This document shows, piece by piece, positions 4,665 through 64,000 of a DNA stretch of 64,000 bases. The notes under the pieces are model-generated. The model was not told where the DNA came from and did no database searches. It saw nothing but the letters and a program-made list of their open reading frames with translations. Position 1 is the first letter of the stretch, and each line of letters begins with the position of its first letter. The stretch lies in the IMG/VR virus record IMGVR_UViG_3300029945_000001, positions 62,001-126,000 of that record. One strand, 5' to 3'. A program made the translations under genes and the position numbers.

Positions 4665-5696
4665 ATGAAAAACCGTGAATCTATCTTTGACGTATTTAGT
4701 GTTAAACAAACAGTTAATAATCCACAGTTAACCGAACTTATTAATTTCTTAATGGATAATAGAGATGTTAGACTTGACCACGATATTACTAAACAGATTA
4801 CATCTCGTGATCCCTTGATTAAACCAGGAATCAGTCATATTTTCCGTAGAGCTGTTATGAGTGGTAAAGACAATATTTTTTCTTTCTGTAATATTCCTAT
4901 GAATACAAATGCTCCAGAGATTGTCACTTATGACTATGTCAGTTTTGACTTTGCTCAGCTTGCTGGTAAGCATGCCAATTTATACAAAGACACTACCTTC
5001 ATTCCTGGATTTAAAGATACTGTTTTTTATAATGTTTCATCTGTTATTAAGACAAATAATGAACCTAGTGACATCAATCAATTTCAAGCAAAATGTGTGT
5101 TATCTATGTTATCAAGAAGTTACTATAATAGTGGTGTTTTACCTTGGTTAACACCTACAATCATTAGGTTTTTATGCCGAAGCTATAATATGTCCATTGG
5201 TACTGCCATAAGCAGTTCCTATGGACTTACCTATGCCGAAATGCAAATTATCAAGACAATTTTGTCATTTTATTTCTTAAAATGTGTTGCTTCTGTTCAT
5301 GAAGCAGAGGTTCTAATTAAGACCTCAAAACTCGATTTAGGTCCTACAAATGAGATCCAGGATGTTGTTAATAAAATAAAAGAATTACTCGGCGATAAAT
5401 ACGAAAATATATCATTTGATGACATGTGTTATTGTATTCAAAATTGTGGTATTGGTAGATTGTCTGGCGTTAATAGAAAATGGATGGTTCAGAGATTGAA
5501 AAGTCTTGGTCCTGATATGTTTACAACAAGTATTGCTTTGGAATACCCTCCCTACTTCTGCTATTTATTGTTATTGGCCGAGGCTGGTAAAAAGATCGGT
5601 ATGTTTAATATATTAATGAAGACCGATCTCAAAAGAGAAGTTAATGAATTTATTGACAACATTATTAAATCCCCTTCATTTATTTCTACAATCTAA
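4665..5696 (+). CDS. virion structural protein (phiKZ gp28-like)
   Basis: Divergent from the sheath as in phiKZ gene order; ALEYPPYF motif; similar size. Confidence 0.55.
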   Translation: MKNRESIFDVFSVKQTVNNPQLTELINFLMDNRDVRLDHDITKQITSRDPLIKPGISHIFRRAVMSGKDNIFSFCNIPMNTNAPEIVTYDYVSFDFAQLAGKHANLYKDTTFIPGFKDTVFYNVSSVIKTNNEPSDINQFQAKCVLSMLSRSYYNSGVLPWLTPTIIRFLCRSYNMSIGTAISSSYGLTYAEMQIIKTILSFYFLKCVASVHEAEVLIKTSKLDLGPTNEIQDVVNKIKELLGDKYENISFDDMCYCIQNCGIGRLSGVNRKWMVQRLKSLGPDMFTTSIALEYPPYFCYLLLLAEAGKKIGMFNILMKTDLKREVNEFIDNIIKSPSFISTI

Positions 5697-28532: not shown

Positions 28533-29366
28533 ATGCTTGAAGAAGCAACTATCCGTCAGAAAATTGGTGAAGATATCACCAACGTTACAAATGGTAATTT
28601 CGATGGACCACTCTGGGTCTGGAGAGATAAAAACGAAACAACAGGTGTCTTGGGGTTAATCTCTAAATTGAACCACCATATTCCCGAAGGGCTTGAGTAT
28701 GCATGGTTTCACAATAGTGTTGAGAGATTTATTCAGGACCTTCTCTCAGCAAGTGATTGTAGTAATGAGTCATATGAGACGATTACCAGGTTTATCAACT
28801 CTGTTATTAAGGTCGGTACTGGTGGAGCCGAGTATACGATTTTCTACCATACCCCATTCGATCGTATAACTGGTGCAGATTCATATCGCCCAGCTATTTT
28901 TACTGTAACCCCGGGTGTTTCCAATATCATATTGCATCACAACGTTCCGACATATGACTGCCGGGCACGTGATGAATACATTAAAAATGGTTATGGAGAT
29001 CGTGAGTTCTTCCGAACATATCGTCTCAGTGAGAAGCAGTTGAGTGATGGCAAATTCTGGTTTTTAAATGGAGAAGTCTTCGACTCTTCTGGAGAACCTG
29101 AGTTATTCACTCTTAAGATCGTCACGAATAATGAGGCCGATGTGACATCTGTCACGTTTCCCATTGATGATTATGTGACTGGAGAAATGAATGACGGGCA
29201 TCTCATTATAACGCTCATCAATCCCGATAGAGTCAAGAACATTGATATCAATACCGACGACTTCTCATTTGCTGAACTCGGAGATGCTATTTTCAAACGT
29301 AAACGAGAGCTTGTCATCAACACCGGATACAAATATCCTGATCAAGCGGAGGTTATAGATGTCTGA
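28533..29366 (+). CDS. hypothetical protein
   Basis: AGGAG RBS; 277 aa. Confidence 0.7.
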   Translation: MLEEATIRQKIGEDITNVTNGNFDGPLWVWRDKNETTGVLGLISKLNHHIPEGLEYAWFHNSVERFIQDLLSASDCSNESYETITRFINSVIKVGTGGAEYTIFYHTPFDRITGADSYRPAIFTVTPGVSNIILHHNVPTYDCRARDEYIKNGYGDREFFRTYRLSEKQLSDGKFWFLNGEVFDSSGEPELFTLKIVTNNEADVTSVTFPIDDYVTGEMNDGHLIITLINPDRVKNIDINTDDFSFAELGDAIFKRKRELVINTGYKYPDQAEVIDV

Positions 29367-29535
29367 GAAAAAACCGATCCGTACTACAGAAGAGCTACTC
29401 GAAGCATGGAAACATCTTCGTAATGCAACTCCGAGAGAGCTTGCGGTTGTCGATCCTTACTTTCTTCCAGAAGTAATGTATCGCCTCAAGGAGATAAATG
29501 ATGAACTTACAGATCCACATCTGTGGCCAACATGA
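29359..29535 (+). CDS. small hypothetical protein (58 aa, below ORF-track cutoff)
   Basis: GGAGG RBS; MSEKKPIRTTEELLEAWKHLRNA...HLWPT; overlaps the previous stop. Confidence 0.55.
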   Translation: MSEKKPIRTTEELLEAWKHLRNATPRELAVVDPYFLPEVMYRLKEINDELTDPHLWPT

Positions 29536-29544
29536 AAGATACTG

Positions 29545-29925
29545 ATGCGAGACGAGATCTCGTCTCGCATCAGCTACAAAAAAACACAATACTGGGGTAG
29601 GAGCATGATCATGATTTCGCCTATATATCCACTAAGTCTAGTCTCTGTTATTTTGATTTTTATTATTGTCTATAGAATTCTAATAGAATTGAAAGCGATT
29701 AGTGCCATTAATATGGGATTTTATCAAGGATTGCCGAGCACACATTTACGCCAAGTAGAGCATGCTTGTATTGTTATCAGAACACCAATCTTTGAGAATG
29801 AACTCAAGTCCGTAGTTAGATGTATAAAGAACGATCTGTGGATACAGGCTATCTATCAAAATAAGAAATCAGATTATCCCAATATAGCAAGGTTTGCTAA
29901 ATATCACAACATTGAACTAGAATAA
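29545..29925 (+). CDS. hypothetical membrane-anchored protein
   Basis: One TM segment; likely start ATG near 29605 after GGGAG. Confidence 0.55.
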   Translation: MRDEISSRISYKKTQYWGRSMIMISPIYPLSLVSVILIFIIVYRILIELKAISAINMGFYQGLPSTHLRQVEHACIVIRTPIFENELKSVVRCIKNDLWIQAIYQNKKSDYPNIARFAKYHNIELE

Positions 29926-29939
29926 AGGAGTTTAAGCTT

Positions 29940-30218
29940 ATGACTCTTGACGAAGAAGAACTTGAGCTAAGTAAACAGCTCGATAATATTTACATTGCTA
30001 TTGTGAATGAATATCATTTAAGATCTCAGTATATAGTTAAACGATTATTTGAAATTAAGCAACAGAAGATTTTATTACAACCGCTATCTATATCGTTTGA
30101 TGAAGTACAACCCTGTTATAATAAACAAGAATTTCTGGATCGGATGGCACAGCTTCCAAAATTAGATGACTCCGAGAGTCTCTCTGCTATCTTTAAAGAA
30201 GAAGGAACATCATCATGA
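29940..30218 (+). CDS. hypothetical protein
   Basis: AAGGAG RBS. Confidence 0.6.
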   Translation: MTLDEEELELSKQLDNIYIAIVNEYHLRSQYIVKRLFEIKQQKILLQPLSISFDEVQPCYNKQEFLDRMAQLPKLDDSESLSAIFKEEGTSS

Positions 30219-30539
30219 AACAACTCACTATCTCGACGACATTCGATGATGCACAGCATGAACTCGCACTAAAGGATGTGCTGGATAAGTCAATGCGGTG
30301 TGTAATCAATAAGCAGATGAAAGTGTTATTTGCAGACCCACATCTTGATGTTTCTGATTGCCGGTGGTTTAAAGGACCCCCCGATCTATCTGCTGACACT
30401 AAGCTTATTCAAGGTGGTTAATATTACCAAAGACGGCATAATGTGCTATGACGGTATCCCTGACGATAATATCCTCGTCAAATCTCGCTTGGCGGCCGAT
30501 GCCGAGATCCTTAAGGATCTCTTGAAAGAAAAAACATGA
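30215..30539 (+). pseudogene. hypothetical gene, possibly frameshifted (ORFs 30215-30421 and 30330-30539)
   Basis: Two overlapping short ORFs; the second lacks an RBS and reads like a C-terminal continuation. Confidence 0.35.
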
Positions 30540-30609
30540 TCAAATATATACAAGATAAGTCCACTCTTTGAATTGTGTAATCAAACACAGTTCATTGGAG
30601 TATGACTAG

Positions 30610-30816
30610 GTGACTAAAGAACAAGAACTGAAGTTTTGGGATGCTTTGGGCGATGGCTCTGGCTGGCCTAAAATGACGGACGACCCAGAAGTCAACTTTG
30701 TGGTAGACTGGTTCGTGGCCGACAAAGACGATTGGGATTTCTCCTATACCACATGGGACGAACTCCCTGAGGAGGACAAAATCGTCTACCGTTACGAAGC
30801 AGAGCATATGAAGTAA
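30610..30816 (+). CDS. small acidic Trp-rich hypothetical protein
   Basis: GGAG RBS; followed by a hairpin. Confidence 0.6.
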   Translation: MTKEQELKFWDALGDGSGWPKMTDDPEVNFVVDWFVADKDDWDFSYTTWDELPEEDKIVYRYEAEHMK

Positions 30817-30931
30817 AACTACATAGAGGATGTGCCGATGCACATCCTCTATTTTTTTATTTGTAGTCAATTATATTTCAAATATATATTATTATTATGT
30901 AATGTTATAACAGAAGGTAAGGTGTACTAAA

Positions 30932-36436: not shown

Positions 36437-37615
36437 ATGCTTGAATTAATAGTAGATTACTTAAAATCAAATATAGTTGCTAGTGGTCTTATTGTAGGTT
36501 CAGTGTCCGGTTTTCTACTATATATAATAAAAGGTATTCCAAAAGCTACATTTGATACTTTTTTAAAATATTTTTCTGTATCATTGACTGTAAGAAATGA
36601 TGATCCTATATTTAGTGATATAGCAAATTATGTAACAAAACTAAGAAATAATGTAAAACATTTTCATTATTCTAATGATAAATATGAATTTAATGAAATA
36701 ATTTATTCTGTAGATAGTAATAGAATTGTTACTATAAATAGAATTACTGAAAATAATCAAATAAGTTGGGGTAGTGGTAAGAATAAGGTAGAGACGATTA
36801 TCATAAAGTGGTATCTCACAAGAAATACAAAGCTAATAACAAAGTTTGTAGAACAGTTAAAATTATCTAATGAAGATAGTAAAATGATAGATGTTTATAG
36901 TAGAAGTAATGATTATTTCGAAATCATTAAAAAGAATAAGAGAAGTATAAATTCTATTTATCTTAATGGTGATATATTAGATAATCTTTTGAGTGATATA
37001 AAATTATTTATATCTAGTGAACAAAAAGAATGGTATGTAAAGAGAGGTATTCCATATCACAGAGGATACTTGTTTTGGGGTCCTCCTGGAACTGGAAAAT
37101 CATCTTCTATATTAGCTATCGCTTCTCATTTTAACTTACCTATATTTTATTGTAATTTTAGTAACATACGTAGTGTTTCTGCATATAACAATAAAATGAA
37201 AATTGTAGTTTTAGAAGATGTTGATACTTTGAATATTGGCAATAAGCGCGATAGTACAGACGATGTTGACAAACGCATATGCGATGATAAATCCAATGTT
37301 CCTCCTGAGCATAAAGATAACAATAATGTTACACTTGTCTCTTTTCTGTCTTTAAGTGATGTGTTAAATGTTTTAGATGGTATCATTGCTCCAGAAAATT
37401 GTATTGTGATTATGACATCTAATCATCCTGAAGTTCTTGATAGTGCACTTATTAGACCTGGTCGTTGTGATGAAGCTATTAAGTTTGATTTATTAGATCA
37501 AAATACCGCAGATAGAATGAAGAAAGATTTTGATATGGATGACCTTGATGTGATAACTCCTATTTCGGCAGCTGCTTTACAAAATGAACTTCTTAAAGCA
37601 AGAAAAGTTCTATAA
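36437..37615 (+). CDS. BCS1-like AAA+ ATPase with N-terminal TM
   Basis: WY..RGIPYHRGYLFWGPPGTGKSS, VVLEDVD, LNVLDG, LDSALIRPGRCD. Confidence 0.88.
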   Translation: MLELIVDYLKSNIVASGLIVGSVSGFLLYIIKGIPKATFDTFLKYFSVSLTVRNDDPIFSDIANYVTKLRNNVKHFHYSNDKYEFNEIIYSVDSNRIVTINRITENNQISWGSGKNKVETIIIKWYLTRNTKLITKFVEQLKLSNEDSKMIDVYSRSNDYFEIIKKNKRSINSIYLNGDILDNLLSDIKLFISSEQKEWYVKRGIPYHRGYLFWGPPGTGKSSSILAIASHFNLPIFYCNFSNIRSVSAYNNKMKIVVLEDVDTLNIGNKRDSTDDVDKRICDDKSNVPPEHKDNNNVTLVSFLSLSDVLNVLDGIIAPENCIVIMTSNHPEVLDSALIRPGRCDEAIKFDLLDQNTADRMKKDFDMDDLDVITPISAAALQNELLKARKVL

Positions 37616-37642
37616 TAAATGGCATGCAGAGGAGAATAACTC

Positions 37643-37960
37643 ATGATACCTACAAAATTTTATAAAAAATATTACGATTAATAATATAGAAATATAGAAG
37701 GACATGATAAACAAGCAGTTAAAATGACATTATACTGTTTTACTTGTACTAAAATTCTTTATTCTTATTCTGTTCAGTGTGCACTTGTTAGAAACAAAAT
37801 GTATAATACAGAAGATTTACATTGGGTAGATTCTATTATTGGTATATCTAAATGCCTTAGTATAAAAAGAATAGCTAGGTTTAATGAAAAATATAGAGTA
37901 AGTAGATTTCTAAGAAAGTATGTTAATAATAGACTCAGGATGATACAACGACACGAATAA
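37643..37960 (+). pseudogene. hypothetical gene interrupted by in-frame TAA TAA
   Basis: GAGGAG RBS before ATG 37643, same frame as ORF 37724-37960, two stops after codon 12. Confidence 0.4.
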
Positions 37961-37982
37961 TCACTTTCCCAAAAGGACTACC

Positions 37983-39788
37983 ATGTCAACGAAAGATGAA
38001 AAGTTACATGTACTAACGTGCTGTTTTAACCCAGAGAATTATAAAGTTCGATATAAGTTGGATCATGACTTTACTGAATATCTTAAAGATTTCCCTAATG
38101 TTATTCATTATAAAATCGAACTGGCATTTGGCGATCAGGAGTTTGTAACAACATCTATTGATAATCCTAACCATATGCAATTACGTACAAATACTATTCT
38201 CTGGTATAAAGAAAACTTGTTAGAAATTCTACGTAAATCAAAATTACCTAAGGATTGTAAGTTTGCATGGATGGATGCTGATATTACTTTTAGTAATGTC
38301 AATATCATTAATGATACATTATCAGCACTTAATGAAAATAGCATTGTTCATATGTTTGATAAGAAGATTAATCTCGGTCCTGATGAAGAAGAACTTAATA
38401 GTAGTACTGGTAGTATTGCTAAGTATATTAACACTAGTAATTTCGGCGGCGCGTCTGGCTTAGCATGGGCAGCAAATAATGAATTTATTAATGCAATTGG
38501 TGGACTTATCGATTGGTGTATTATTGGTTCTGCCGACTGGTGTATGTCAGCAGCTATGCTAGATTGTTTATCTGAATTGGAGTATGATAAATATAATGAA
38601 TACACCAAACCACTACTTGATGCATGGCATGCTAAATTACAGGAAAATGATATTGGTGTAGGATATGTGCATGGTATATGTTATCATCATTTTCATGGTC
38701 ATAAGAAGGACCGTGGGTATGATTGGCGACATAATATTCTTATGAAACATGAGTTTGACCCTAGTAATGATTTACTTTATTTAGATAATGGACTATTGGA
38801 TATTAGTGTAAAGAAAATGGAATTACGTAATGAATTGCGCGAATACTTCCATAGTCGCCAAGAAGATAACGATGTCGAAAATATACTACATGTAGTAACT
38901 ACGGTATTCAATCCATCTGGTTATAATAGTCGATATTTTCTATATAATCAGTTTAAACGATATATGGCTAAATTTAAGAATGTTGTTCTTTATACAGTTG
39001 AATTAACTATTGGTGATCAGCATCATGTTGTAACAGATAACTATAATCCGCGTCATTTACAACTACATACTAACAATGTGTTATGGTATAAAGAAAATCT
39101 TATTAATGAAGGTATTAAGAAACTAATTCCTGCTTCAGCTAAAAATATCGCATACTTTGATGCAGATATGGCGTATTATGATGATAATTGGCCTATGTAC
39201 ATTGTTGATAAACTGAAAGAGTGTGATGTTGTACAATGCTGGTCGTCTTTGGATTTCTTAGATGAAAATTATAATGTATATAAAACACGTAATAGTTTTA
39301 TGTCAGATTATATGTCTGGTCTGCGTCCATCTTTGGATAATCCATTGGGTCCTCCTGGTCTAGCATGGGCAATGACACGCGAAGCTTATGACAAGATTGG
39401 GAGAATTTATGATAAAAATATTGTTGGTGCTAATGATAGGGATTTCTGCCATATTCTTGTTAATGAACATTACCGAATGCCAGAAACATTGAATGGATAT
39501 GATGAACTTATGAGATATAACAATATTGTACGTGCTGCTAATCTATCATACGGATATGTCGACTTGGTCGCAATGCATTATTTTCACGGACATACAAAAG
39601 ACCGTGGATATGGTGTACGAGATTCCATCTTAAATGACATTGATATATCACAAGATCTTAGTTATGATGAGAATGGGCTTCTTCAGATAGTTAACAATAA
39701 AGACCATATCTACTTAAAACTAAAGAAATACTTCGATTCTCGTAATGAAGATGTAGGACATGTGGTAAAAGACGCTGCTGCTGAATAA
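37983..39788 (+). CDS. tandem-duplicated glycosyltransferase-like (GT-A) protein
   Basis: Two ~295-aa repeats, each with LHV.T..FNP, LWYKENL, DAD (DxD), GLAWA, H.FHG..KDRGY. Confidence 0.7.
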   Translation: MSTKDEKLHVLTCCFNPENYKVRYKLDHDFTEYLKDFPNVIHYKIELAFGDQEFVTTSIDNPNHMQLRTNTILWYKENLLEILRKSKLPKDCKFAWMDADITFSNVNIINDTLSALNENSIVHMFDKKINLGPDEEELNSSTGSIAKYINTSNFGGASGLAWAANNEFINAIGGLIDWCIIGSADWCMSAAMLDCLSELEYDKYNEYTKPLLDAWHAKLQENDIGVGYVHGICYHHFHGHKKDRGYDWRHNILMKHEFDPSNDLLYLDNGLLDISVKKMELRNELREYFHSRQEDNDVENILHVVTTVFNPSGYNSRYFLYNQFKRYMAKFKNVVLYTVELTIGDQHHVVTDNYNPRHLQLHTNNVLWYKENLINEGIKKLIPASAKNIAYFDADMAYYDDNWPMYIVDKLKECDVVQCWSSLDFLDENYNVYKTRNSFMSDYMSGLRPSLDNPLGPPGLAWAMTREAYDKIGRIYDKNIVGANDRDFCHILVNEHYRMPETLNGYDELMRYNNIVRAANLSYGYVDLVAMHYFHGHTKDRGYGVRDSILNDIDISQDLSYDENGLLQIVNNKDHIYLKLKKYFDSRNEDVGHVVKDAAAE

Positions 39789-39931
39789 ACTCATAGAGAA
39801 TCAGAAGTTATCGCACGAAGTGTAAGAGACTGGTGCGTGCGCACCAGTCTCTTATTACATTTTATTTAAACATAAGATCATATAAATATGAATAATAGAC
39901 TCTATTATAAAATTATTCTAAGATAGAAGTG

Positions 39932-40057
39932 TTCGATTGCACGTGCCTGGAAAACACGCGTCTCAGCAGTGATGTGGCAATTGGCCTACAACAAGCACAT
40001 CATCTAACGTACCAGGCAATCGAGTAGGTGCTCACCATAATGTTGAGATTTTGAGCA
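39932..40057 (+). ncRNA. candidate doubly pseudoknotted structured RNA or leader
   Basis: GC-rich intergenic island with nested stems and two cross-pairings (see finding). Confidence 0.5.
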
Positions 40058-40095
40058 CTCAACTTTTTGAAGAATTAAACCAGAAGGATCAAAAA

Positions 40096-41223
40096 ATGCA
40101 GATCAAAGAAGCAATACATAATCTATTTTTCAATGTGTTGAAATTAAAAGAGAATGATACTTTATGGTTAGAATTTGATAATCCTTCTGTTGGTAGTCTT
40201 ATGGTTAATACTATTAAAAATTTTAAACAGAACACAAATTTTAAAGTAAATTATGTTGATGTACAAGCTGATATTCTTAGATTATCTATATCTAAAAGTA
40301 ATATTGAAGAAAGAGAATTTGTCGATGAGATGATGCGTAAGATGAAATTGTGTAATAAATATATAAGATTTGTTGACGATGGTGCTATTAGTCATTTTTG
40401 TTCTTTATATGAACAGTTCGGTATTAAAGAACTTGTTGGTAAAAGAAGAATGTTAATGTCTGAAGTTACTCGATATAGAGTTAATAATCTCAAGTGGGTA
40501 GTCTCTGTAATTCCCTCTATACCATTAGCAAATTTTTATAAATGTGATTTTGATGAATTTTCAAAGATGATTATTGATGGTATTAATTTGAATTATGCAG
40601 AACTTGAAAAGTATGCAACTCCACTTATAGATATCTTAAATCAAAAAGGTAAAACTGTTCGTATATATAGCGATGCTCGATTTACTGATCTTACATTCAA
40701 GCTATCTGGAGCTGGCACTGAACTTTGTGCTGGTAAGATCAATATCCCAGACGGTGAAGTATTTACATCTCCTGAATTAAATAGTGTCAATGGTACAATT
40801 ATGTTTGGCCCTAGTTACTATAATGGAGAATTCTTTAAATATATTTATTGTGAATTTAAAGATGGTGTTTGTTATAAATCTCTTGCAGAAAGTGAAGAGC
40901 GTACAAATGCTTTAAATAAGATTCTAGATGTTGATCCTGGAGCAAGAAAAGTTGGTGAATTTGCACTTGGGTTAAATACTAAAATCACTAAGTCGACAGG
41001 ATTTGTTTTGACTGATGAAAAAGTATTTGGATCTATACATCTTGCTTTAGGTAAAGCTTATGAAACTATGTCGGATAATGGGAATAGATTGGCCAATCAT
41101 TGGGACCTTGTTCACAATCAACAATTAAGATATGGTGGCGGTGCCCTTTATATCGATGGTGTTCTTATAAGAAAAGATGGATTATTTGTTCCAGAAGAAC
41201 TTACACCTCTAAATACTTTATAA
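40096..41223 (+). CDS. aminopeptidase, peptidase family M29 (AmpS/aminopeptidase II-like)
   Basis: NIPDGEVFTSP, GEFALG, DEKVFGSIHLALGKAY, HWDLV; GAAGGA RBS before ATG 40096. Confidence 0.88.
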   Translation: MQIKEAIHNLFFNVLKLKENDTLWLEFDNPSVGSLMVNTIKNFKQNTNFKVNYVDVQADILRLSISKSNIEEREFVDEMMRKMKLCNKYIRFVDDGAISHFCSLYEQFGIKELVGKRRMLMSEVTRYRVNNLKWVVSVIPSIPLANFYKCDFDEFSKMIIDGINLNYAELEKYATPLIDILNQKGKTVRIYSDARFTDLTFKLSGAGTELCAGKINIPDGEVFTSPELNSVNGTIMFGPSYYNGEFFKYIYCEFKDGVCYKSLAESEERTNALNKILDVDPGARKVGEFALGLNTKITKSTGFVLTDEKVFGSIHLALGKAYETMSDNGNRLANHWDLVHNQQLRYGGGALYIDGVLIRKDGLFVPEELTPLNTL

Positions 41224-41226
41224 TGA

Positions 41227-42150
41227 ATGGCTATTGTAGAGGTACCAACTAAAGATTTAATGGAACTTAGATTACATACACAAGTTATGATACATCCTGG
41301 CAATGCACTTGGTATTAAGAGTGGCGGAATAGCAGATGCTTTTGAAAAAGAATATCCTAATTCTTTTGATATGTATAAAACAGGTGGATTTGTAGAAGGT
41401 ACTTTTAGAGTAGGAACCGTTCTTGAAACTATAGAGAAAAATCATGTTATTCTTCATCTCATTACGAAAAATCATTATGGCGATGTTATGTCATATGACG
41501 ATCTTAGAGTGTGTCTTAATAACTTAAAAGACTATTTGTTAGATAATTCATTTATAGATAGATCAAAATATGTTTGTTGTATTCCTATTCTCGGGTGTTA
41601 TAATAATCAATTAGATACAGATACTGTTGTTAAAATGTATTATGATATTTTAGATGATATACCAAATATAATTCAATTATGTAGACAACCAGAAAGTTAT
41701 AATAGATTTCCTCAATATCTTGGTCTTTGTGGTCATATACGATTTAATAATAAGAAACTATTAAAAGTTGAATTATCTACTTTTATAAATAATGTATTTC
41801 CTACAGCACTTAAAGCCATAGTGATAACAGATACGAATAATGATTTTAATAGAACAGTCGAAGACGTTGTTGATGAACTTAATATAAAACTTATTAAAGT
41901 ACCAACAGATTTTAAACAATTTAAAAAGAATGGTTTTTATATTAGAAATTCTATTATGTTTAATATTTGTACAGCATTCTTATCTATTAATAAAAACAAA
42001 TTCTATTCGTCTTTATCTTACTTTTTAGAAGAGAAGGTTGTTAAGTATAATAGAAACTGTGATGATCTCAGAGTTATTAAAAAATATAATGAACCAGATC
42101 TTTTTGTTCCAGATAGAAAAGTCTTTATTAATTCAAACATATATTACTAA
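41227..42150 (+). CDS. macrodomain fused to degenerate SLOG/YspA-like domain
   Basis: GIADAFEKEYP, LITKNHY, PILGC (macro); CGHIRF ... VPTDFKQF..GFYIRNSIM (SLOG-like). Confidence 0.6.
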   Translation: MAIVEVPTKDLMELRLHTQVMIHPGNALGIKSGGIADAFEKEYPNSFDMYKTGGFVEGTFRVGTVLETIEKNHVILHLITKNHYGDVMSYDDLRVCLNNLKDYLLDNSFIDRSKYVCCIPILGCYNNQLDTDTVVKMYYDILDDIPNIIQLCRQPESYNRFPQYLGLCGHIRFNNKKLLKVELSTFINNVFPTALKAIVITDTNNDFNRTVEDVVDELNIKLIKVPTDFKQFKKNGFYIRNSIMFNICTAFLSINKNKFYSSLSYFLEEKVVKYNRNCDDLRVIKKYNEPDLFVPDRKVFINSNIYY

Positions 42151-42176
42151 TCTGAACAAACAAAAGGAAAGATTGT

Positions 42177-43304
42177 ATGGATTTCGGAGAAGATTCTAAT
42201 TTCGATTTTAAATTATCTTCGGATGTAGCAAAAGGTGTTGTTATAAATAACAATAATTCCATTGGTCAATCCCATACTTTTGAATTAACATCATCTAAAG
42301 ACAGTAAAGAACTTATATTACGACCCATTAAAGATTTTACAACTCCTAAACGTATCTATGGTAGAGATCTTATTGTAAAGAGAGATCGTGTTTTAAATAA
42401 ATATAAGTCTACAACGACGACTCTTGGTGTATTGGCGGTTGGTGAAAAAGGAAGTGGTAAGTCACTTCTCCTCCAGATGATTAGTATTCTGGCGTGGGAA
42501 AGATACCAACTCAATACAGTTGTTATTGCAGACGATAGTTTAACGTATAATAAGGCTGGTGAATTATTGCTTGATTATATTTCTAAGTTACCCCCATGTG
42601 TTATCATTATCGACGAATTTGAAAAGATATTTAACATTTATGATCAGAAACGACTTCTTACACTCATGTCTGGTTTGTATGCTACTCGAAAGATTTTCTT
42701 ATTATCTGCTAATGATAAAAATCGTATTGATCAACATATGCTCAATAGGCCTGAAAGAATTCGATATTATTATCAGTTTAGTGGTGTTGGTGAAGATTAC
42801 ATTCGTGAATTTTGCGAAGAACGACTTAATGATAATATCTCTGATAGAATTAATAAGAATGAAGAAATTAATGATATTGTTTCTATTGCAAAAACATTTA
42901 GTGCATTTAATCACGACATGTTGCAGGCGCTTGTTGAAGAGATTAATGAGTTTAAAGAACCTGCATATACAGCAGTTAAGTATCTGAATATTAATCCTGA
43001 AAATGCTAATAAAATGAAATGGTCTATTGGTATATTCGATAAAGACAATAAACCATTCCAAGCTGTTAATCCTAATGTTCATACAAAACATCCTCTTGAT
43101 ATTGAAAATTTAATGGTTAGTTATTCTGATGGTAATAGTCCTTGGAATAGTATTGTTTTGACATCTGCTGATTATGTTGATGCTCAGAATGAAAATACTA
43201 TTTATGTATACAAACAAGGTGATGTGACTGTTAAGTTTATTAAAGTTGAAGATAAAATTGTTGATTATTTAACCGGGACAATTCAAACAGGAGAAAAGAA
43301 ATGA
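42177..43304 (+). CDS. AAA+ ATPase
   Basis: GEKGSGKS, IIIDEFEK, MLNRPERIRY. Confidence 0.85.
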   Translation: MDFGEDSNFDFKLSSDVAKGVVINNNNSIGQSHTFELTSSKDSKELILRPIKDFTTPKRIYGRDLIVKRDRVLNKYKSTTTTLGVLAVGEKGSGKSLLLQMISILAWERYQLNTVVIADDSLTYNKAGELLLDYISKLPPCVIIIDEFEKIFNIYDQKRLLTLMSGLYATRKIFLLSANDKNRIDQHMLNRPERIRYYYQFSGVGEDYIREFCEERLNDNISDRINKNEEINDIVSIAKTFSAFNHDMLQALVEEINEFKEPAYTAVKYLNINPENANKMKWSIGIFDKDNKPFQAVNPNVHTKHPLDIENLMVSYSDGNSPWNSIVLTSADYVDAQNENTIYVYKQGDVTVKFIKVEDKIVDYLTGTIQTGEKK

Positions 43305-44071
43305 TAGCTTTAAAATCGACAGTTGGAAATGTTTATATATTAGAAAGTATTGGTATTATTAAACAGCTTAGTACTTTTAAAAATGGTAATGAAATACGTA
43401 TTCAGGTCGTATTAGATAATAAGCATATTCCTATTAATGATAATCCGTGTACTATTGATATTGATTGTGAAGATAGTAATGAAGTGAGATCTACTCTTGA
43501 TATATTATTTGCTCATGCTGATAATAGTAACGATATTACGGATATTATCTATAAGTGTTCAGGAGATTTACAAGTTACTACTAATAACGTGGTTACTGGC
43601 GGAACTGGCCTCACTGGATGTGATATCGGTAGTGGTAGTAGTACTACATTTATCGATATGGGTAATTCTGGTATTAAAGAAAGCGATAGCGAAGGACCTA
43701 CGTTTCTCAAAGGACTGGATAATTATCACTTTAATTTCTCTATCGTATTAGATGAAAATATTATTAGTAGTATTACAACAACTCCTAATTTTAGACAAGA
43801 ATTTATAAATGGCGATGATGATATTATTTGGAACATGTCTGCGGATAACGATAAAGTTAATATGAGTATTTCTGGGACAGAATTTGAAATACAACTCAGT
43901 TCTATCAATATAGGTGTACATAAACTCATTAGAACTATTAGAAATGAATTGATAAAGATGTTTACTGAGTTTAATAATGCTGAAGTAATTATTTTATCAA
44001 ATGATAGTGGAAATAATCGTATTATTGATCTTTCACCATATTCTACTAAAGCATGCTTAGTACTGAAGTAA
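43301..44071 (+). CDS. hypothetical protein
   Basis: AGGAG RBS; overlaps the upstream stop. Confidence 0.6.
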   Translation: MIALKSTVGNVYILESIGIIKQLSTFKNGNEIRIQVVLDNKHIPINDNPCTIDIDCEDSNEVRSTLDILFAHADNSNDITDIIYKCSGDLQVTTNNVVTGGTGLTGCDIGSGSSTTFIDMGNSGIKESDSEGPTFLKGLDNYHFNFSIVLDENIISSITTTPNFRQEFINGDDDIIWNMSADNDKVNMSISGTEFEIQLSSINIGVHKLIRTIRNELIKMFTEFNNAEVIILSNDSGNNRIIDLSPYSTKACLVLK

Positions 44072-44514
44072 TTATTTTATCAAATAAAGAAGATATTGAA
44101 AAAGTCATAGAAGATGTCAAACCACTTATTATAGAAAGTATAAATAGTATTAAATCAAGAGAATATGGTGAAATGTTTGTTTTGAGTGAAGACAGAATTA
44201 TAACTATAATTAAAATGAATACATTGGTTATCCTAAAGAACAAGGACAATAATGATATTATCGGTTATGCTTCTATTATTAAACTTGAAGCATTCAAAGA
44301 TGCTATTTTTATTAATGATATTTTTGTTAGATATGAATATAGAGGACGACGTTATGGTCACTTATTAATGGATGAAATAATTGATGAATTCAGAGATAGT
44401 TGTTCAAATATTATCCTTAATTCTGATATTGATAATTATATCGCAAACAGATTCTATAAAAAGTTAGGATTTGAAATAACAAATTATACACAACGTTTAA
44501 AACTTTTGCCATGA
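44053..44514 (+). CDS. GNAT acetyltransferase
   Basis: IFVRYEYRGRRYGHLLM (motif A), N..ANRFYKKLGF (motif B). Confidence 0.88.
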   Translation: MLSTEVIILSNKEDIEKVIEDVKPLIIESINSIKSREYGEMFVLSEDRIITIIKMNTLVILKNKDNNDIIGYASIIKLEAFKDAIFINDIFVRYEYRGRRYGHLLMDEIIDEFRDSCSNIILNSDIDNYIANRFYKKLGFEITNYTQRLKLLP

Positions 44515-60147: not shown

Positions 60148-60216
60148 TGTTAAATAAGTTTCAAAATATTTATACATATATATTAATTTATTGGAACCTG
60201 ATCATAAAAAGTTAAA

Positions 60217-61639
60217 CTACAGTTGAATTTCACAGTGTAGCAACCTTCTGCTCTGATCCGCACCGCCCCGCTGTGATCCGTTCTCCAGGAAAATGAGTGT
60301 CCTTTCTCATTTTAGTGTATTAGTCAACTGTGGGCTCTCGACCAAGGTGATGAAAATCATCTAAACCTGGGTATATGTTGAGAGTATAATTAAGATAGTG
60401 TTGTGACGAAGGTAACATCCGCGCCCTTCGCGTCAGGACGGCTAACCACATGCAGGTCAGTGTGCTAGCACAACACCGTAACATCTGCCACTAACATGCA
60501 ATCCGGCGACTATCAGTTTTCGAAGCATGTTTTAAAAGTCCTGATAATGCAGATGTATAGCAAATATCAAGTCGACTTGTAGAAATACAACATTCTGGTC
60601 AAGGTGCATGGAATTAACGGACCTAAACACCTTGTTGCGTCGGTTGACTTGAGAGTTCTCGTGTGGAGTTGTTGTCAATGCCGTGTCCTGGTCCTTGGAG
60701 GGGATGACGCCGTAGAAGATACCAATATGGAATACCGGAATATTCCCACATGAGCACGCTTTGTTTTCATGAGTTTTCTTTCTTTGTCCAAGTTACTGAA
60801 GATGATCTATAGCCATAGATCGAAACCTAGTTACGACGATGGTCTAACAGGCAGGACAAAGTACTGACCAGGTGTGCTGGCGCTGATATTATGCGACGTT
60901 TTATCGTTGCTGTAGATGCTGGCATATCGAAGATGTTTGTTGTGGTAAACACGCCGTTGAGATCAGCTATAGATGATCGATGATGTGGCGGTGTGCAATG
61001 AGATGATCATACGATTCCCAAGAAGGGAACTGTGATTATCTATGACTTATACACGACAGTGATCCATATGTGATCCATTGTGTGTTTGTTCTTTACATTG
61101 TTAATACCACGACGAACGTAATAACTGTGTGTTGTCTGGATAAGGGTCATGTATCCCGCAATCTGGTATCGCACTAACTCTGGTAGATATACAGTTGAGA
61201 CCGTGTCTCTAAATCTACAAGTGAGCATGTGTCTGGTGGGTTTGGGCTGAAAAAATGCCATCTGATCCACCAGACACATCTCGCGAAACCTCTTAAGTGG
61301 CGATACCGTTAGACTGAGACCCAGCTTGCTGACTAGCATTTTGTGCAGTTGGCTATGCGCGATTTATTTCGGGCATCTTCTGGCAGATATGTCGTTCTCC
61401 ACGAACCCTCCAGATCAGAGGACTTGCTCAAGATTGGTATCGTAGAGCAGGTAACTAATTTGTCCTGTAAACTATGTGATGTCGGAAAAGTCAGATCCGA
61501 TGATCTGATCAACATCATACTATCGGATGTAATGCCCCCATGGATGTTAATAGCATTTGCATTATGAGATCGGCAGATATACACATCTGATAGGAGTCGT
61601 ACCCCACACGATGAGCTCTGTGGAATCCAGAGCATCTGC
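60217..61639 (+). ncRNA. structured non-coding block A (back-to-back RNA modules)
   Basis: No credible ORF; about a dozen consecutive domains, each closed by a stem, mostly of 8-13 bp; promoter-like TATATTAA at 60179. Confidence 0.7.
60782..60861 (+). ncRNA. type I hammerhead ribozyme
   Basis: GTTA-CTGAAGA-t-GATCTAT(agcc)ATAGATC-GAAA-CC...GG-TC^TAAC, with stem I extended by CTTTGTCC/GGACAAAG. Confidence 0.85.
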
Positions 61640-61641
61640 AA

Positions 61642-61730
61642 GCGCGTATGGCGAAGCTGGCTGAAACGCATCAGACTTAAAATCTGACACATAAGAAACA
61701 CCGTGGGTTCGATCCCCACTACGCGCACCA
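61642..61730 (+). tRNA. tRNA-Leu(UAA)
   Basis: GCGCGTA/TACGCGC acceptor, TCAGA-CTTAAAA-TCTGA anticodon arm, T arm, CCA; variable region long but weakly paired. Confidence 0.9.
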
Positions 61731-61789
61731 TGAGGGGGTGTAAGTTATAACTTACACCCCTCCACCAACAATTTTCGATGACATACAAT

Positions 61790-61865
61790 GAGCACGTAAC
61801 TCAGTTGGTAGAGTACTCGACTTTTAATCGAGATGTCATGGGTTCGAGCCCCATCATGCTCACCA
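61790..61865 (+). tRNA. tRNA-Lys(UUU)
   Basis: CTCGA-CTTTTAA-TCGAG anticodon arm, 76 nt, CCA; one C.A mismatch in the acceptor stem. Confidence 0.92.
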
Positions 61866-61938
61866 TTTTTTTAAAACAAGAGACGAGCTTATCTATGTCT
61901 TCTTTTAGATATTGATAAACTCATGTTATAAAGGAAAT

Positions 61939-62014
61939 GGACGCGTAGCACAGCGGTTAGTGCCGACCGCTCATAACGGTCTGGTCGTAGGTTCGAATCC
62001 TACCGCGTCCACCA
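61939..62014 (+). tRNA. tRNA with CAU anticodon, probably tRNA-Ile2 (reads AUA after lysidine modification)
   Basis: GGACGCG/CGCGTCC acceptor, GACCG-CTCATAA-CGGTC anticodon arm; lacks initiator features. Confidence 0.85.
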
Positions 62015-62029
62015 ACCTTTTTCCATAAC

Positions 62030-63174
62030 GGTCTAGTTGGAAGTTCAGATCTCTCCGTACTGTAATAGGTAACCTCAGGAGATATAAGCATGACCAGATC
62101 ATGCAGGTTCGTTCTTCATAGATTGAACTTCTAAGACCACATCTGAGGTGCAATGCCTCGGCAGAGATAGCTATGTCATGTAGCATAAGTAAAAAAAACA
62201 CCAACGATGAAGTTGTACTCTCTAAAGAGTTAATGAACATGTTCAGACATCTTAGGTGAACATTTACACCTTCAAAAAGATGGTAGCAACAGTATGGGTG
62301 AGAACAAAGCCATCATGCTGGATATCTGGTAACAGTGTCCAGACCCATGTGCCCCCAAGAAACCATTGCGCTACGAGGATCTAGTGGAATTGATGCCATG
62401 CTTCGCATGCGCACAGGTTATAATAACCACATTGTCCTTATCTGAACATTTTTATTGACTCTCTCGGAGAAAACCCTCGTTTGTTGAAATGTTTATCACA
62501 AAGCTGTTATGACTCAATGACATAACAGTTTACCGCTTAAGGTTAACCATCTATCCCTCATCACCGTAGTACGCCTAGGAGTTGTCCTATGTGGTCCAAA
62601 ATGATGAATGATGAGCGGTGGCGAACAGCCGGGTTTGGAGACTGTGTGATATGGCCTCCTAACTGGGCTCTGTTGTTCTTTCATGCATTGACACCCAGTG
62701 TATCGAGAGAATATCGGTCCGTCTCGAACGGACAACTTTCCTGCTTTAGATCGTATGTTTTGGCATATGTCTTAATCCGCACCGGTCCGGCCGATGTATG
62801 GATATGGGCGTAACTCGTCAACGATCTGCTAACAGGCTGAAGAACATGGAAGGTATACCAGGACTACGATCGCCGGCTCTAACTTAAGTCATCTGGAGTC
62901 ACTCAGGGACTATCCTGCGGTGAACATACGATGAGAGTTATCTTGGGATCATTTCCGTATACACACAACTGCTGTGTCCATAAGTGTTCTGTGTCTGAAA
63001 GCAAGGCATGAAGTGATTTTGTCACCGCCAACCCGCTATGTGGGAGATCCGTGAAAAGGTCTCCCACTACGGTTTCTTTAGTGTAGATTAAGGTGAACAC
63101 CGAACACGGAATGGGCCTCCGCGCAACACAATCCCCCGATGTTGCTATGTTCGGTGTTCTCCTTAGTTTATACA
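62030..63174 (+). ncRNA. structured non-coding block B
   Basis: 20/21-bp stem 62227-62247/62441-62461, 12-bp stem 63095-63106/63148-63159 and many internal hairpins. Confidence 0.65.
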
Positions 63175-63242
63175 TATTAAATTCTTCAGGCAGCTGCTTA
63201 TTTTTTATTTCAAAGATAAATATATATTAATACATTGAATTC

Positions 63243-63322
63243 GCCGCAGTATCTCCTTGGCCTTCTAAGCTATTGAAAGAGTAACTGGACACATGGGGGT
63301 TCGAATCCCTCCTGCGGCGCCA
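63243..63322 (+). tRNA. atypical tRNA-Arg(UCU)-like RNA lacking a canonical D arm
   Basis: Perfect acceptor GCCGCAG/CTGCGGC+GCCA, T arm GGGGG-TTCGAAT-CCCTC, anticodon loop CTTCTAA; only 8 nt between acceptor and anticodon stems. Confidence 0.7.
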
Positions 63323-63393
63323 ATCATTTAAAATATTCTAATCCGGGATCGTCGGTCTGAGTCTGACCTGGAGACCACTAAGATACCATATAT

Positions 63394-63438
63394 CTTCTAA
63401 GCGGCAGGTCGTAGGTTCGAGTCCTACTGGGATCGCTA
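63394..63438 (+). pseudogene. 3' half of a canonical tRNA-Arg(UCU); 5' half missing
   Basis: CTTCTAA-GCGGC-AGGTC-GTAGG-TTCGAGT-CCTAC-TGGGATC-GCTA with no matching 5' acceptor, D or anticodon strand. Confidence 0.7.
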
Positions 63439-63872
63439 AGCTGCCATACATCTTCTTCAGTTTCGGGTCCTTCTGAGTAAGGCATTTGAGTATGCACACC
63501 GATCCATGAAAGTGGGGACAGTGTATCGGTTCTTTTAAAAGTTTTGGCTCCGTTAACTGAGTCTGGACTGCTCACCGGCATGTATGTGTCAGTGTTGTCG
63601 GAAAAGCATACAAATGCATTAATGGTTAGAGGGTGTCCATCTTCGGATCGGCATTTTGGCCATAGTCGCTAGAAATCAGTGAAACGGGCTGGTCTCGGGA
63701 TAAATTGTAAGTCTGACGACCGAGATAAGATTAATGACTTACCAAAGTCCTGGTGTGTTAAAAAACTTATGGTGATGTAACCAGGGATGCGAACTATGTT
63801 TGCCATCGGACGCCAAGCGATCGATGAAACCATTCTAAATTCCACTTAACTTTTAGGTCGATGTTATCGGGC

Positions 63873-63909
63873 TGTCACATGCATGGACGTAATGTCCATG
63901 TATGTGACA
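63873..63909 (+). terminator. hairpin ending the RNA cluster
   Basis: TGTCACATGCATGGAC-gtaat-GTCCATGTATGTGACA followed by TTATTTTTT. Confidence 0.75.
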
Positions 63910-64000
63910 AGTTCATTTATTTTTTAATACATTTTGAGTTTTATACAAAAAATAAATATATATTACTTATTTAGAAATATGGAGTGACTATCATGAATTA

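What the first reader, a model, noticed from the sequence alone, without database searches (positions are those of the whole stretch)
39932..40057. Doubly pseudoknotted RNA upstream of the aminopeptidase operon
Seen: a GC-rich island in AT-rich intergenic DNA. Rod: TTCGATTG (39932-39)/CAATCGAG (40017-24), CCTGG/CCAGG, TGATGTG (39970-76)/CACATCA (39996-40002). Downstream hairpin: GTGCTCA/TGAGCAC. The bulge TCTCAGCA (39961-68) is complementary to TGTTGAGA (40041-48) in the loop of that hairpin, and the apical CCTAC (39985-89) is complementary to GTAGG (40024-28). I recognise no known riboswitch consensus. Inference: an undescribed riboswitch-like leader, ribozyme or sRNA.
Basis: partly seen in the sequence, partly recalled or inferred. 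Interest (0 to 1): 0.65.

Follow-up and report, generated by a model that had tools for sequence, protein, structure and literature searches.

The report
Orphan structured leader before phage aminopeptidase
Every copy found elsewhere is identical, so nothing shows yet that the fold matters.

Summary
The stretch is a real GC island: 52% GC in its best 80 bases, against about 22-30% in the flanks. It lies in a 307-nt gap between the strong terminator of a 601-aa gene and the ribosome-binding site and ATG of an M29 aminopeptidase gene. The host genome is a 208-kb phiKZ-like jumbo phage from peat.

Support from the single sequence is modest:
- Four perfect helices of 7 bp or more, against 0.62 in shuffles (P about 0.003, uncorrected).
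- A 9-bp loop-to-loop pairing (P about 0.008).
- Folding-energy z-scores of only -0.8 to -1.6, with no strand preference.

The second "pseudoknot" (CCUAC/GUAGG) is at chance level and clashes with P1 and P4, so "doubly pseudoknotted" is not supported.

No Rfam family matches. Every other copy found is 100% identical. Neither flanking gene has a relative above about 41% identity, and those relatives lack the element. Covariation therefore cannot be tested.

My best reading, at about 0.4, is a lineage-specific structured 5' leader of a two-gene unit (M29 peptidase plus a phosphatase-like gene). It probably acts on read-through or mRNA stability. Riboswitch or ribozyme function is unproven.

The parts
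39822..39855 (+). Intrinsic terminator of the upstream 601-aa gene: a 15-bp perfect stem, 4-nt loop and T-rich tail. It sets the upstream limit of the transcription unit.
   Evidence: It has the same style as this phage's other + strand terminators (12-17 bp stems, 3-4 nt loops).
39856..39929 (+). AT-rich spacer (about 22-24% GC) in which a promoter must lie if the unit is transcribed on its own. Candidates are TATG at 39886-89 (the phiKZ late-promoter core) and the sigma-70-like pair TAGACT 39896-901, 17-nt spacer, TAAGAT 39919-24. None is verified.
   Evidence: Read from the sequence. The TATG consensus comes from PMC7618050. No phiKZ-type early promoter scores here, and sigma-70-like sites are not enriched in this genome. 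Inference only.
39930..39940 (+). P1, 5' strand. It pairs with 40016-40026: 11 bp with two G-U pairs, of which 39933-40 / 40016-23 is a perfect 8-bp Watson-Crick core.
   Evidence: Pair probability is only 0.03-0.06 when the whole 142 nt is folded, but P1 forms when the rod is folded alone.
39944..39950 (+). P2, 5' strand. It pairs with 40012-40018 (7 perfect bp) and shares 40016-18 with P1.
   Evidence: Pair probability is 0.96.
39951..39968 (+). Internal loop J2/3. Bases 39960-68 are complementary to 40041-49 in the loop of P4 (PK1: 9 bp including two G-U pairs, -11.4 kcal/mol).
   Evidence: P about 0.0075 against loop shuffles.
39969..40003 (+). P3 hairpin: stem 39969-76 / 39996-40003 (7 Watson-Crick pairs plus one G-U) and a 19-nt apical loop 39977-95. 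It contains an 11-codon ORF running from ATG 39972 to TAA 40005-07.
   Evidence: pair probability 0.86-1.0.
40004..40026 (+). J3/2 (40004-11), then the 3' strands of P2 (40012-18) and P1 (40016-26). GAGU 40022-25 can instead pair with ACUU 40062-65 to extend the downstream hairpin.
40027..40068 (+). P4 hairpin: 40028-34 / 40052-58, 7-8 bp, with a 17-nt loop that holds the PK1 3' strand (40041-49). It is followed by UCAAC and a U5 run (40064-68). A competing weak hairpin is GUUGAG 40042-47 / CUCAAC 40058-63. This is a possible weak attenuator, not a standard terminator.
   Evidence: (repeat I4).
40084..40098 (+). Ribosome-binding site AAGGA (40084-88) and the ATG (40096-98) of the M29 gene. Neither is predicted to be strongly occluded.
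   Evidence: unpaired probabilities 0.12-0.47 for the ribosome-binding site and 0.63-0.99 for the AUG.
40096..41223 (+). M29 family aminopeptidase gene (375 aa).
   Evidence: Pfam PF02073, E = 3.4e-27. The nearest non-identical relatives are 41% identical and bacterial.
41227..42150 (+). 307-aa phosphatase-like gene that starts 4 nt after the M29 stop. It is probably co-transcribed. The next gene (42177) has its own TATATTAC motif at 42140.
   Evidence: PHROG phrog_335 'phosphatase', E = 1.7e-12.

Best explanation
The stretch 39930-40068 (+ strand) is the structured 5' untranslated leader of a two-gene unit (M29 aminopeptidase plus a phosphatase-like gene) in an uncultured phiKZ-like jumbo phage from peat.

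The proposed fold is a three-helix rod (P1-P2-P3) followed by a hairpin (P4). The loop of P4 can pair with the internal loop of the rod (PK1).

I infer that it acts in cis. It either tunes how much transcription passes the weak hairpin-plus-U5 signal at 40027-40068, or protects the 5' end of the mRNA. The 3' strand of P1 (GAGU 40022-25) can instead form the base of an extended hairpin that abuts the U run. P1 and the fuller terminator-like form therefore partly exclude each other, which gives a possible switch.

Shown: the position, the composition, the complementarities and the absence of any known family. Inferred: transcription start, the fold in vivo, any switching, any effector.
For: 1. 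Position. It lies after a strong terminator (39822-55) and 16 nt before the ribosome-binding site and ATG of the M29 gene, with every neighbouring gene on the + strand.
2. Composition. It is a 47-52% GC island between 22-27% GC flanks in a 32% GC genome, while the downstream gene itself is about 27-30% GC. This suggests the GC content is maintained rather than simply imported. Outside the tRNA region only one intergenic island is richer.
3. Helices. There are four perfect helices of 7 bp or more against 0.62 expected (P about 0.003). P2, P3 and P4 have pair probabilities of 0.86-1.0.
4. PK1 is -11.4 kcal/mol, P about 0.0075.
5. Strand. P1, P3 and PK1 are lengthened by G-U pairs, which would be A-C mismatches on the minus strand.
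6. Leader length. Any start upstream of the element gives a leader of 165 nt or more. This phage's early-promoter motifs sit 12-126 nt before their start codons, about 50 nt at the median.
7. Precedent. In phiKZ-like phages 201phi2-1 and phiKZ, long-read transcriptomics found 5'UTR-derived small RNAs made by premature termination (PMC11512511).
8. RNA libraries. One peat metatranscriptome holds a 151-nt contig over 39939-40089 and another over 40083-40233. This fits a leader transcribed continuously with the gene.
Against: - Folding-energy z-scores are not significant (-0.84, and -1.3 to -1.6) and are the same on both strands.
- The helix-count statistic is post hoc, and 3.4% of genome windows reach the same count.
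- There is no evolutionary support at all. Every other copy is 100% identical.
- A covariance model built from the element finds nothing in any of these: relatives' loci, 12 viral records, 80 bacterial M29 loci with 1 kb of upstream sequence, 5 whole genomes that carry M29, 151 Bacillota genomes, 151 Verrucomicrobiota genomes, and 25 loci fished with a sequence pattern.
- P4 is unlike this phage's real terminators.
- P1 is not in the minimum-energy fold of the full stretch.
- No promoter could be identified.
- The RNA-library contigs have depth 2, and carry-over of DNA is not excluded.
Confidence: 0.4

Rival explanations
1. It is no functional RNA structure. The island is a compositional relic, for example DNA that arrived with the M29 cassette from a GC-richer donor or a decayed gene fragment, and its inverted repeats are coincidental.
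For: - Folding-energy z-scores are not significant on either strand.
- There is no homologue and no covariation.
- The M29 gene was clearly acquired from bacteria (nearest relatives 41% identical) and is absent from the same position in the relatives of the 601-aa gene.
- Other GC-rich 'intergenic' islands in this genome turned out to be small GC-rich ORFs.
Against: - The adjacent M29 gene has phage-like low GC, so an imported neutral flank should have decayed as well.
- Four perfect nested helices (P about 0.003) and a 9-bp loop-loop match (P about 0.008) are unlikely together.
- The bacterial M29 upstream regions examined show nothing similar.
Confidence: 0.3
2. It is a small RNA in its own right, about 135-140 nt from roughly 39930 to the U run at 40064-68. 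It would be made by premature termination in the 5'UTR and act in trans on phage or host messages.
For: - A hairpin plus U5 lies at the 3' end.
- Eight of the eleven sRNAs in phage 201phi2-1 arise this way (PMC11512511).
- The long unpaired loops (18, 19 and 17 nt) could serve as seed regions.
Against: - P4 is a poor terminator by this phage's own standard.
- Only 27 nt separate the U run from the ATG, so the gene must be transcribed through the element.
- The RNA-library contig 39939-40089 runs past the U run.
- No enrichment over the element is seen in four metatranscriptomes.
- No target was identified; only 10-11-nt chance matches occur in the genome.
Confidence: 0.12
3. It is a true ligand-sensing riboswitch or a self-cleaving ribozyme of a new class. 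PK1 would be part of the binding or catalytic core.
For: - The architecture (a rod with large internal loops, plus a hairpin docking into an internal loop) resembles the tertiary organisation of several riboswitches.
- P1 and the extended terminator-like stem partly exclude each other.
- No known family matches.
Against: - There is no second example anywhere, whereas riboswitch and ribozyme classes are normally recognised by recurrence.
- No known ribozyme core matches in Rfam.
- The expression platform is weak.
- The link between the gene's function and any ligand is unknown.
Confidence: 0.1
4. The island encodes a small protein: a 32-codon ORF from GTG 39929 to TAG 40025-27 (or the 11-codon ORF from ATG 39972). 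The high GC would reflect coding sequence of foreign origin.
For: - The open frame exists.
- Its GC pattern by codon position (first 0.62, third 0.53, second 0.38) is compatible with coding.
- This genome does carry GC-rich small ORFs.
Against: - It has no ribosome-binding site, and the start codon is GTG.
- Its codon usage is no better than in the other two frames (-0.63 against -0.69 and -0.91).
- The only hit among 1.84 billion representative proteins is a repeat protein with 8-9 of 24 identities per repeat.
Confidence: 0.05

Closest known systems
5'UTR-derived small RNAs and premature-termination leaders of phiKZ-like jumbo phages (201phi2-1 sRNA005, and the leader upstream of phiKZ gp182)
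   Same: It comes from the same broad kind of phage. The genome has a phiKZ-type TATATTAC early-promoter motif (about 20-24 intergenic copies) and a homologue of the phiKZ RNA polymerase subunit gp74. Like those RNAs, it is a structured element inside a 5'UTR that ends in a hairpin and a U run (PMC11512511).
   Different: There is no sequence or positional homology. Those RNAs precede a conserved tail gene and are conserved among related phages. This one precedes an acquired M29 peptidase gene and has no relative. No transcript ends have been mapped here.
Riboswitches with terminator-type expression platforms and a docking pseudoknot (for example ZTP: two sub-domains joined by a pseudoknot)
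   Same: It sits in a leader. It has a rod-like sub-domain plus a second hairpin joined by long-range pairing. P1 competes with a downstream stem next to a U run. The comparison with ZTP rests on my knowledge of published architectures, not on a test made here.
   Different: No Rfam riboswitch model matches, even at E<=10. There is no recurrence and no conserved core. The terminator is weak, and no ligand can be inferred.
5' stem-loops that stabilise mRNA (ompA-type 5' hairpins, phage mRNA leaders)
   Same: It is a stable GC-rich structure at or near the 5' end of an mRNA in an AT-rich genome, and the ribosome-binding site is not occluded. The comparison rests on general knowledge.
   Different: Such elements are usually simple hairpins. 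This one is about 140 nt with four helices and a possible tertiary contact.

Membership tests
Any Rfam 15 family (4227 models, including all curated riboswitches, ribozymes, leaders and phage RNAs) | A covariance-model score at or above the family's gathering threshold | tested here: not met
   In the whole window only tRNAs passed. At E<=10 on 421 nt and on 148 nt there was no + strand hit over the element. The only hits were chance-level minus-strand matches: over the upstream spacer, and one (9.4 bits against a cut-off of 60, E=7) over 40030-40064.
Riboswitch (as a class) | An aptamer that recurs across genomes, with a conserved core and covarying helices | tested here: inconclusive
   Only 100% identical copies exist. 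Covariance model R1 found nothing in any set searched. A model built from one sequence has limited reach.
Riboswitch (as a class) | An expression platform whose structure excludes part of the aptamer (a terminator/antiterminator pair, or sequestration of the ribosome-binding site) | tested here: inconclusive
   The 3' end of P1 (40022-25) can instead extend the P4 hairpin up to the U run. The terminator-like form has -40.0 kcal/mol and the P1 form -36.0. However, a shortened P1 can coexist with the extension, the hairpin is unlike this phage's terminators, and the ribosome-binding site is not sequestered.
Riboswitch (as a class) | Direct, specific ligand binding | not testable with these tools
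   This needs in-line probing, calorimetry or similar.
Self-cleaving ribozymes | A match to a known catalytic core, or demonstrated cleavage | tested here: not met
   No Rfam ribozyme model matches. Cleavage itself cannot be tested here.
Intrinsic terminator | A GC-rich stem with a short loop, followed at once by a U run | tested here: not met
   P4 has a 17-nt loop and the U5 run starts 5 nt after the stem. The scanner did not call it. The phage's own terminators have 12-17 bp stems and 3-4 nt loops. The alternative hairpin 40042-47 / 40058-63 abuts the U run but has only 6 bp, a 10-nt loop, -6.1 kcal/mol and a pair probability of 0.01.
tRNA or tRNA-like gene | A cloverleaf recognised by ARAGORN or the Rfam tRNA model | tested here: not met
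   ARAGORN found none in 39000-41000, and there is no Rfam tRNA hit. The GUUCGAUUG at 39931-39 merely resembles a T-loop.
M29 aminopeptidase (the downstream gene) | A Pfam PF02073 match above the gathering score | tested here: met
   95.7 bits against a cut-off of 27, E = 3.4e-27.

The most novel reading that the evidence does not exclude
This is a singleton, previously undescribed regulatory RNA fold: a three-helix rod whose internal loop docks into the loop of a downstream hairpin. It would sense a metabolite or a phage or host factor and gate transcription of an acquired aminopeptidase-phosphatase module. [quoted passage not shown]
Probability: 0.1. Interest if true: 0.7.

Novelty: new member of a known kind. 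Interest (0 to 1): 0.3.

Why it matters
If the fold is real and regulatory, it would be a rare case of a cis-acting structured leader in a jumbo phage that uses its own polymerases. In relatives of such phages, transcription is known to be separated from translation. It would also point to regulated use of an acquired peptidase and phosphatase pair during infection. As it stands it is a reasonable but unproven candidate. Its practical value is as a short, well-defined target of about 140 nt for chemical probing and reporter tests, and as a reminder that GC islands in AT-rich phage genomes are worth screening.

Tried and rejected
- Known families: Rfam at the gathering threshold and at E<=10 gave nothing. 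ARAGORN gave nothing.
- Second copy in the same genome: blastn-short and nhmmer found none.
- Close relatives by DNA: the phage collection gave no match in distant mode. An exact 24-mer scan of viral contigs returned only the same phage.
- Relatives through neighbouring genes: the M29, 601-aa, 307-aa and tail-sheath proteins each returned only 100% identical contigs from the viral contigs.
- The large protein search showed the next-best relatives at 41% (M29) and 38% (601-aa). They lie in unrelated contexts that lack the element.
- The other cluster members were only alternative start calls on identical DNA.
- Covariance model R1 gave no hit in any of these: relatives' loci, 12 viral records, 80 bacterial M29 loci, 5 whole genomes, 151 Bacillota genomes, 151 Verrucomicrobiota genomes.
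- The degenerate two-block pattern AAAACACGCG-N(28-58)-CTAACGTA gave 25 non-self loci in the viral contigs, none of which scored with the model.
- A pattern specific enough to avoid thousands of random hits would recover only the many identical peat copies.
- Promoter: there is no phiKZ-type early promoter in the gap. Gibbs sampling of 97 upstream regions gave only AT-rich and ribosome-binding-site motifs. Sigma-70-like sites are not enriched.
- Small-ORF reading: there is no credible relative.
- T-box, hammerhead and tRNA-remnant readings were considered from the sequence and dropped for lack of the defining motifs.
- Chimallin (phiKZ gp54) was not detected by sequence in this genome. Given its divergence this does not show absence, so I make no claim that the phage forms a nucleus.

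Full report
**Where the window lies.**
- The window is bases 62001-126000 of a 208,374-bp IMG/VR virus record with 32% GC.
- Its tail sheath is about 27% identical to those of phiKZ-like jumbo phages.
- It has a homologue of the phiKZ RNA polymerase subunit gp74, E = 1.8e-35.
- About 20-24 intergenic copies of AGATATATATTACT lie 12-126 nt before start codons. This contains the published phiKZ early-promoter core TATATTAC (PMC7058600).
- The same DNA occurs at 100% identity in at least 18 peat-metagenome runs and in several IMG/VR and ENA contigs.

**The locus.**
- A 601-aa ORF ends at 39788. It has no Pfam or PHROG match, and it is a tandem duplication of a roughly 300-aa domain.
- A 15-bp perfect terminator hairpin with a T-rich tail follows at 39822-39855.
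- Next comes about 75 nt of 22-24% GC spacer.
- The GC-rich island spans 39930-40068.
- The ribosome-binding site AAGGA lies at 40084-88, and the ATG of a 375-aa M29 aminopeptidase gene (PF02073, E = 3.4e-27) at 40096.
- A 307-aa phosphatase-like gene follows 4 nt after the M29 stop.
- The next gene (42177) has its own TATATTAC motif at 42140, so the 'operon' is probably two genes.

**Checking the observation.**
- The repeat finder recovered P1, P2, P3 and P4 independently as perfect inverted repeats of 8, 7, 7 and 7 nt.
- With G-U pairs, P1 grows to 11 bp (39930-40 / 40016-26), P3 to 8 bp and PK1 to 9 bp.
- P1 and P2 overlap by three bases at 40016-18.
- The island is real: 0.42-0.47 GC in 100-nt windows and 0.52 in the best 80 nt, against 0.24 and 0.27 on its two sides.
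- Among intergenic islands of the whole genome, only one outside the tRNA region is richer. That one looks like a small GC-rich ORF.

**Is it more than chance?** The evidence is mixed.
- For: four perfect helices of 7 bp or more occur in 142 nt, against a mean of 0.62 in 3000 dinucleotide shuffles (P about 0.003).
- For: the J2/3-to-L4 duplex is -11.4 kcal/mol, against a shuffle mean of -5.9 for the best loop pair (P about 0.0075).
- Against: both tests are post hoc on a region chosen for its repeats, and 3.4% of all 142-nt windows in the genome reach four such helices, mostly AT-only.
- Against: folding-energy z-scores are weak. They are -0.84 for 151 nt, -1.29 for the rod and -1.57 for rod plus P4. 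The minus strand scores alike.
- In the ensemble, P2, P3 and P4 are robust (0.86-1.0). P1 is not (0.03-0.06) unless the rod is folded alone.
- The second pseudoknot (CCUAC/GUAGG, -4.8 kcal/mol) is within chance. It also uses bases of extended P1 and of P4. I therefore drop 'doubly'.

**Known families.** None matches. Rfam 15 gives only tRNAs for the window at the gathering threshold. It gives nothing on the + strand over the element at E<=10, whether 421 nt or 148 nt is submitted. ARAGORN finds nothing.

**Comparative evidence, the test that would decide the matter, is not obtainable.**
- There is no second copy in the genome.
- All other copies are identical.
- In a database of 5.8 billion proteins, the M29 protein drops straight from 100% to 41% identity, and those relatives lie in bacterial contexts.
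- The 601-aa protein drops to 38% identity. In its relatives the next gene is different and the gap is only about 55-110 nt.
- Covariance model R1 (142 positions, 27 pairs) finds only itself. The sets searched were the window and relatives' loci, 12 viral records, 80 bacterial M29 loci with 1 kb upstream, 5 whole genomes, 151 Bacillota and 151 Verrucomicrobiota genomes, and 25 loci fished with a two-block loop pattern.
- A model built from a single sequence has limited reach. This shows 'not found', not 'absent'.

**Expression.**
- Six peat metatranscriptome runs hold small parts of a 3.4-kb stretch.
- In the four runs laid on it, short low-depth contigs scatter over the 601-aa gene and the M29 gene.
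- One run has a 151-nt contig over 39939-40089 and another over 40083-40233.
- This fits a leader transcribed together with the gene and past the U run.
- The depth is only 2, these are contigs rather than reads, and DNA carry-over is not excluded. There is no sign of an abundant small RNA.

**Mechanism (inferred).**
- Because a strong terminator lies upstream, the unit needs a promoter within 39856-39929.
- None could be identified with confidence. No early-promoter motif scores there.
- The 4-nt phiKZ late-promoter core TATG occurs at 39886-89 (PMC7618050).
- A sigma-70-like pair, TAGACT then 17 nt then TAAGAT, would start transcription near 39931. Such sites are not enriched in this genome.
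- Any of these starts gives a leader of 165 nt or more, which is unusually long for this phage.
- At the 3' side, P4 is followed by UCAAC and then U5.
- GAGU 40022-25, which belongs to the 3' strand of P1, can instead pair with ACUU 40062-65. This extends the hairpin up to the U run.
- That form is the minimum-energy fold (-40.0 kcal/mol). The P1 form is 4 kcal/mol less stable (-36.0).
- This allows a switch between a read-through form (P1 closed) and a more terminator-like form.
- The exclusion is only partial, because a 6-bp P1 can coexist with the extension.
- The hairpin (7-8 bp, 17-nt loop) is quite unlike this phage's own terminators, which have 12-17 bp stems and 3-4 nt loops.
- The ribosome-binding site is not predicted to be sequestered.
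- I therefore favour a cis-acting leader that modulates read-through or mRNA stability. My confidence is moderate to low.

**Rivals.**
- A compositional relic with coincidental repeats remains a serious rival (0.3).
- A trans-acting sRNA derived from the 5'UTR, as described for 201phi2-1 (PMC11512511), is possible (0.12).
- A true riboswitch or ribozyme is the most novel reading (0.1).
- The small-protein reading (a 32-codon ORF starting at GTG 39929) lacks a ribosome-binding site. Its codon usage is no better than in the other two frames. It has no credible relative among 1.84 billion representative proteins.

**Verdict.** The interpretation as an undescribed structured leader is plausible but unproven. 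'Doubly pseudoknotted' and 'riboswitch/ribozyme' go beyond the evidence. Because the element is an orphan, only experiments or future homologues can decide.

Noticed in passing
window 60150-63990: About 4 kb with no convincing ORF and 45-57% GC surrounds the tRNA genes. ARAGORN tRNAs, and Rfam strong ones plus 2 weak. Most of the GC-rich islands there (for example 60231-60929, 62339-62902 and 63404-63886) are assigned to nothing. They may be unrecognised structured RNAs or decayed tRNAs.
   Followed up: partly
whole genome, for example window 15816, 15883, 31566, 44577, 50041 and 50557: About 20-24 intergenic copies of AGATATATATTACT, followed by a conserved TG a few bases downstream, lie 12-126 nt before start codons. 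This is a phiKZ-type early promoter (core TATATTAC) in a 32% GC peat phage that is only about 27% identical to known phiKZ-like phages in its tail sheath.
   Followed up: partly
window 37983-39788: The 601-aa upstream protein is a tandem duplication of a roughly 300-aa domain. Most database relatives are single-domain proteins of 330-370 aa that cover half of it, and two carry Pfam PF00535 (glycosyltransferase 2). It has no Pfam or PHROG hit itself.
   Followed up: partly
window 36437-44514: This is an unusual accessory cluster for a phage, all on the + strand: a BCS1-like AAA ATPase, a 78-aa ORF, the duplicated 601-aa protein, the M29 aminopeptidase, a phosphatase-like protein, a second AAA ATPase, a 256-aa ORF and a GNAT acetyltransferase.
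   Followed up: no
L145 1-280 (genome 185250-185530, outside the window): There is a group I intron-like match: RF00028, 43.4 bits against a gathering score of 50, E = 2.7e-9. It is cut at the 5' end of the stretch I fetched.
   Followed up: no
L143 148-264, minus strand (genome about 5047-5163, outside the window): There is a weak PrrB/RsmZ-like match: 25.6 bits against a gathering score of 44, E = 0.002. It lies in a GC-rich intergenic island and might be a protein-sponge type sRNA, or chance.
   Followed up: no
window 29340-30820: A run of small ORFs is noticeably richer in GC than the rest of the genome. Each has a ribosome-binding site, and strong terminators lie at about 29540-29575 and 30823-30852. 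It looks like a block of foreign origin. These ORFs, not RNAs, explain the GC islands there.
   Followed up: partly
window 39817-39823 and 39926-39932: The heptamer GAAGTGT occurs immediately before both the upstream terminator hairpin and the P1 helix. It may be chance.
   Followed up: no
window 37900-41300: The phage DNA is 100% identical across many peat-metagenome runs from many studies, and no variant letters were seen in the four RNA-library runs laid on it. It is a remarkably clonal and widespread peat phage with no relative above about 41% protein identity for the two flanking genes in public data.
   Followed up: partly
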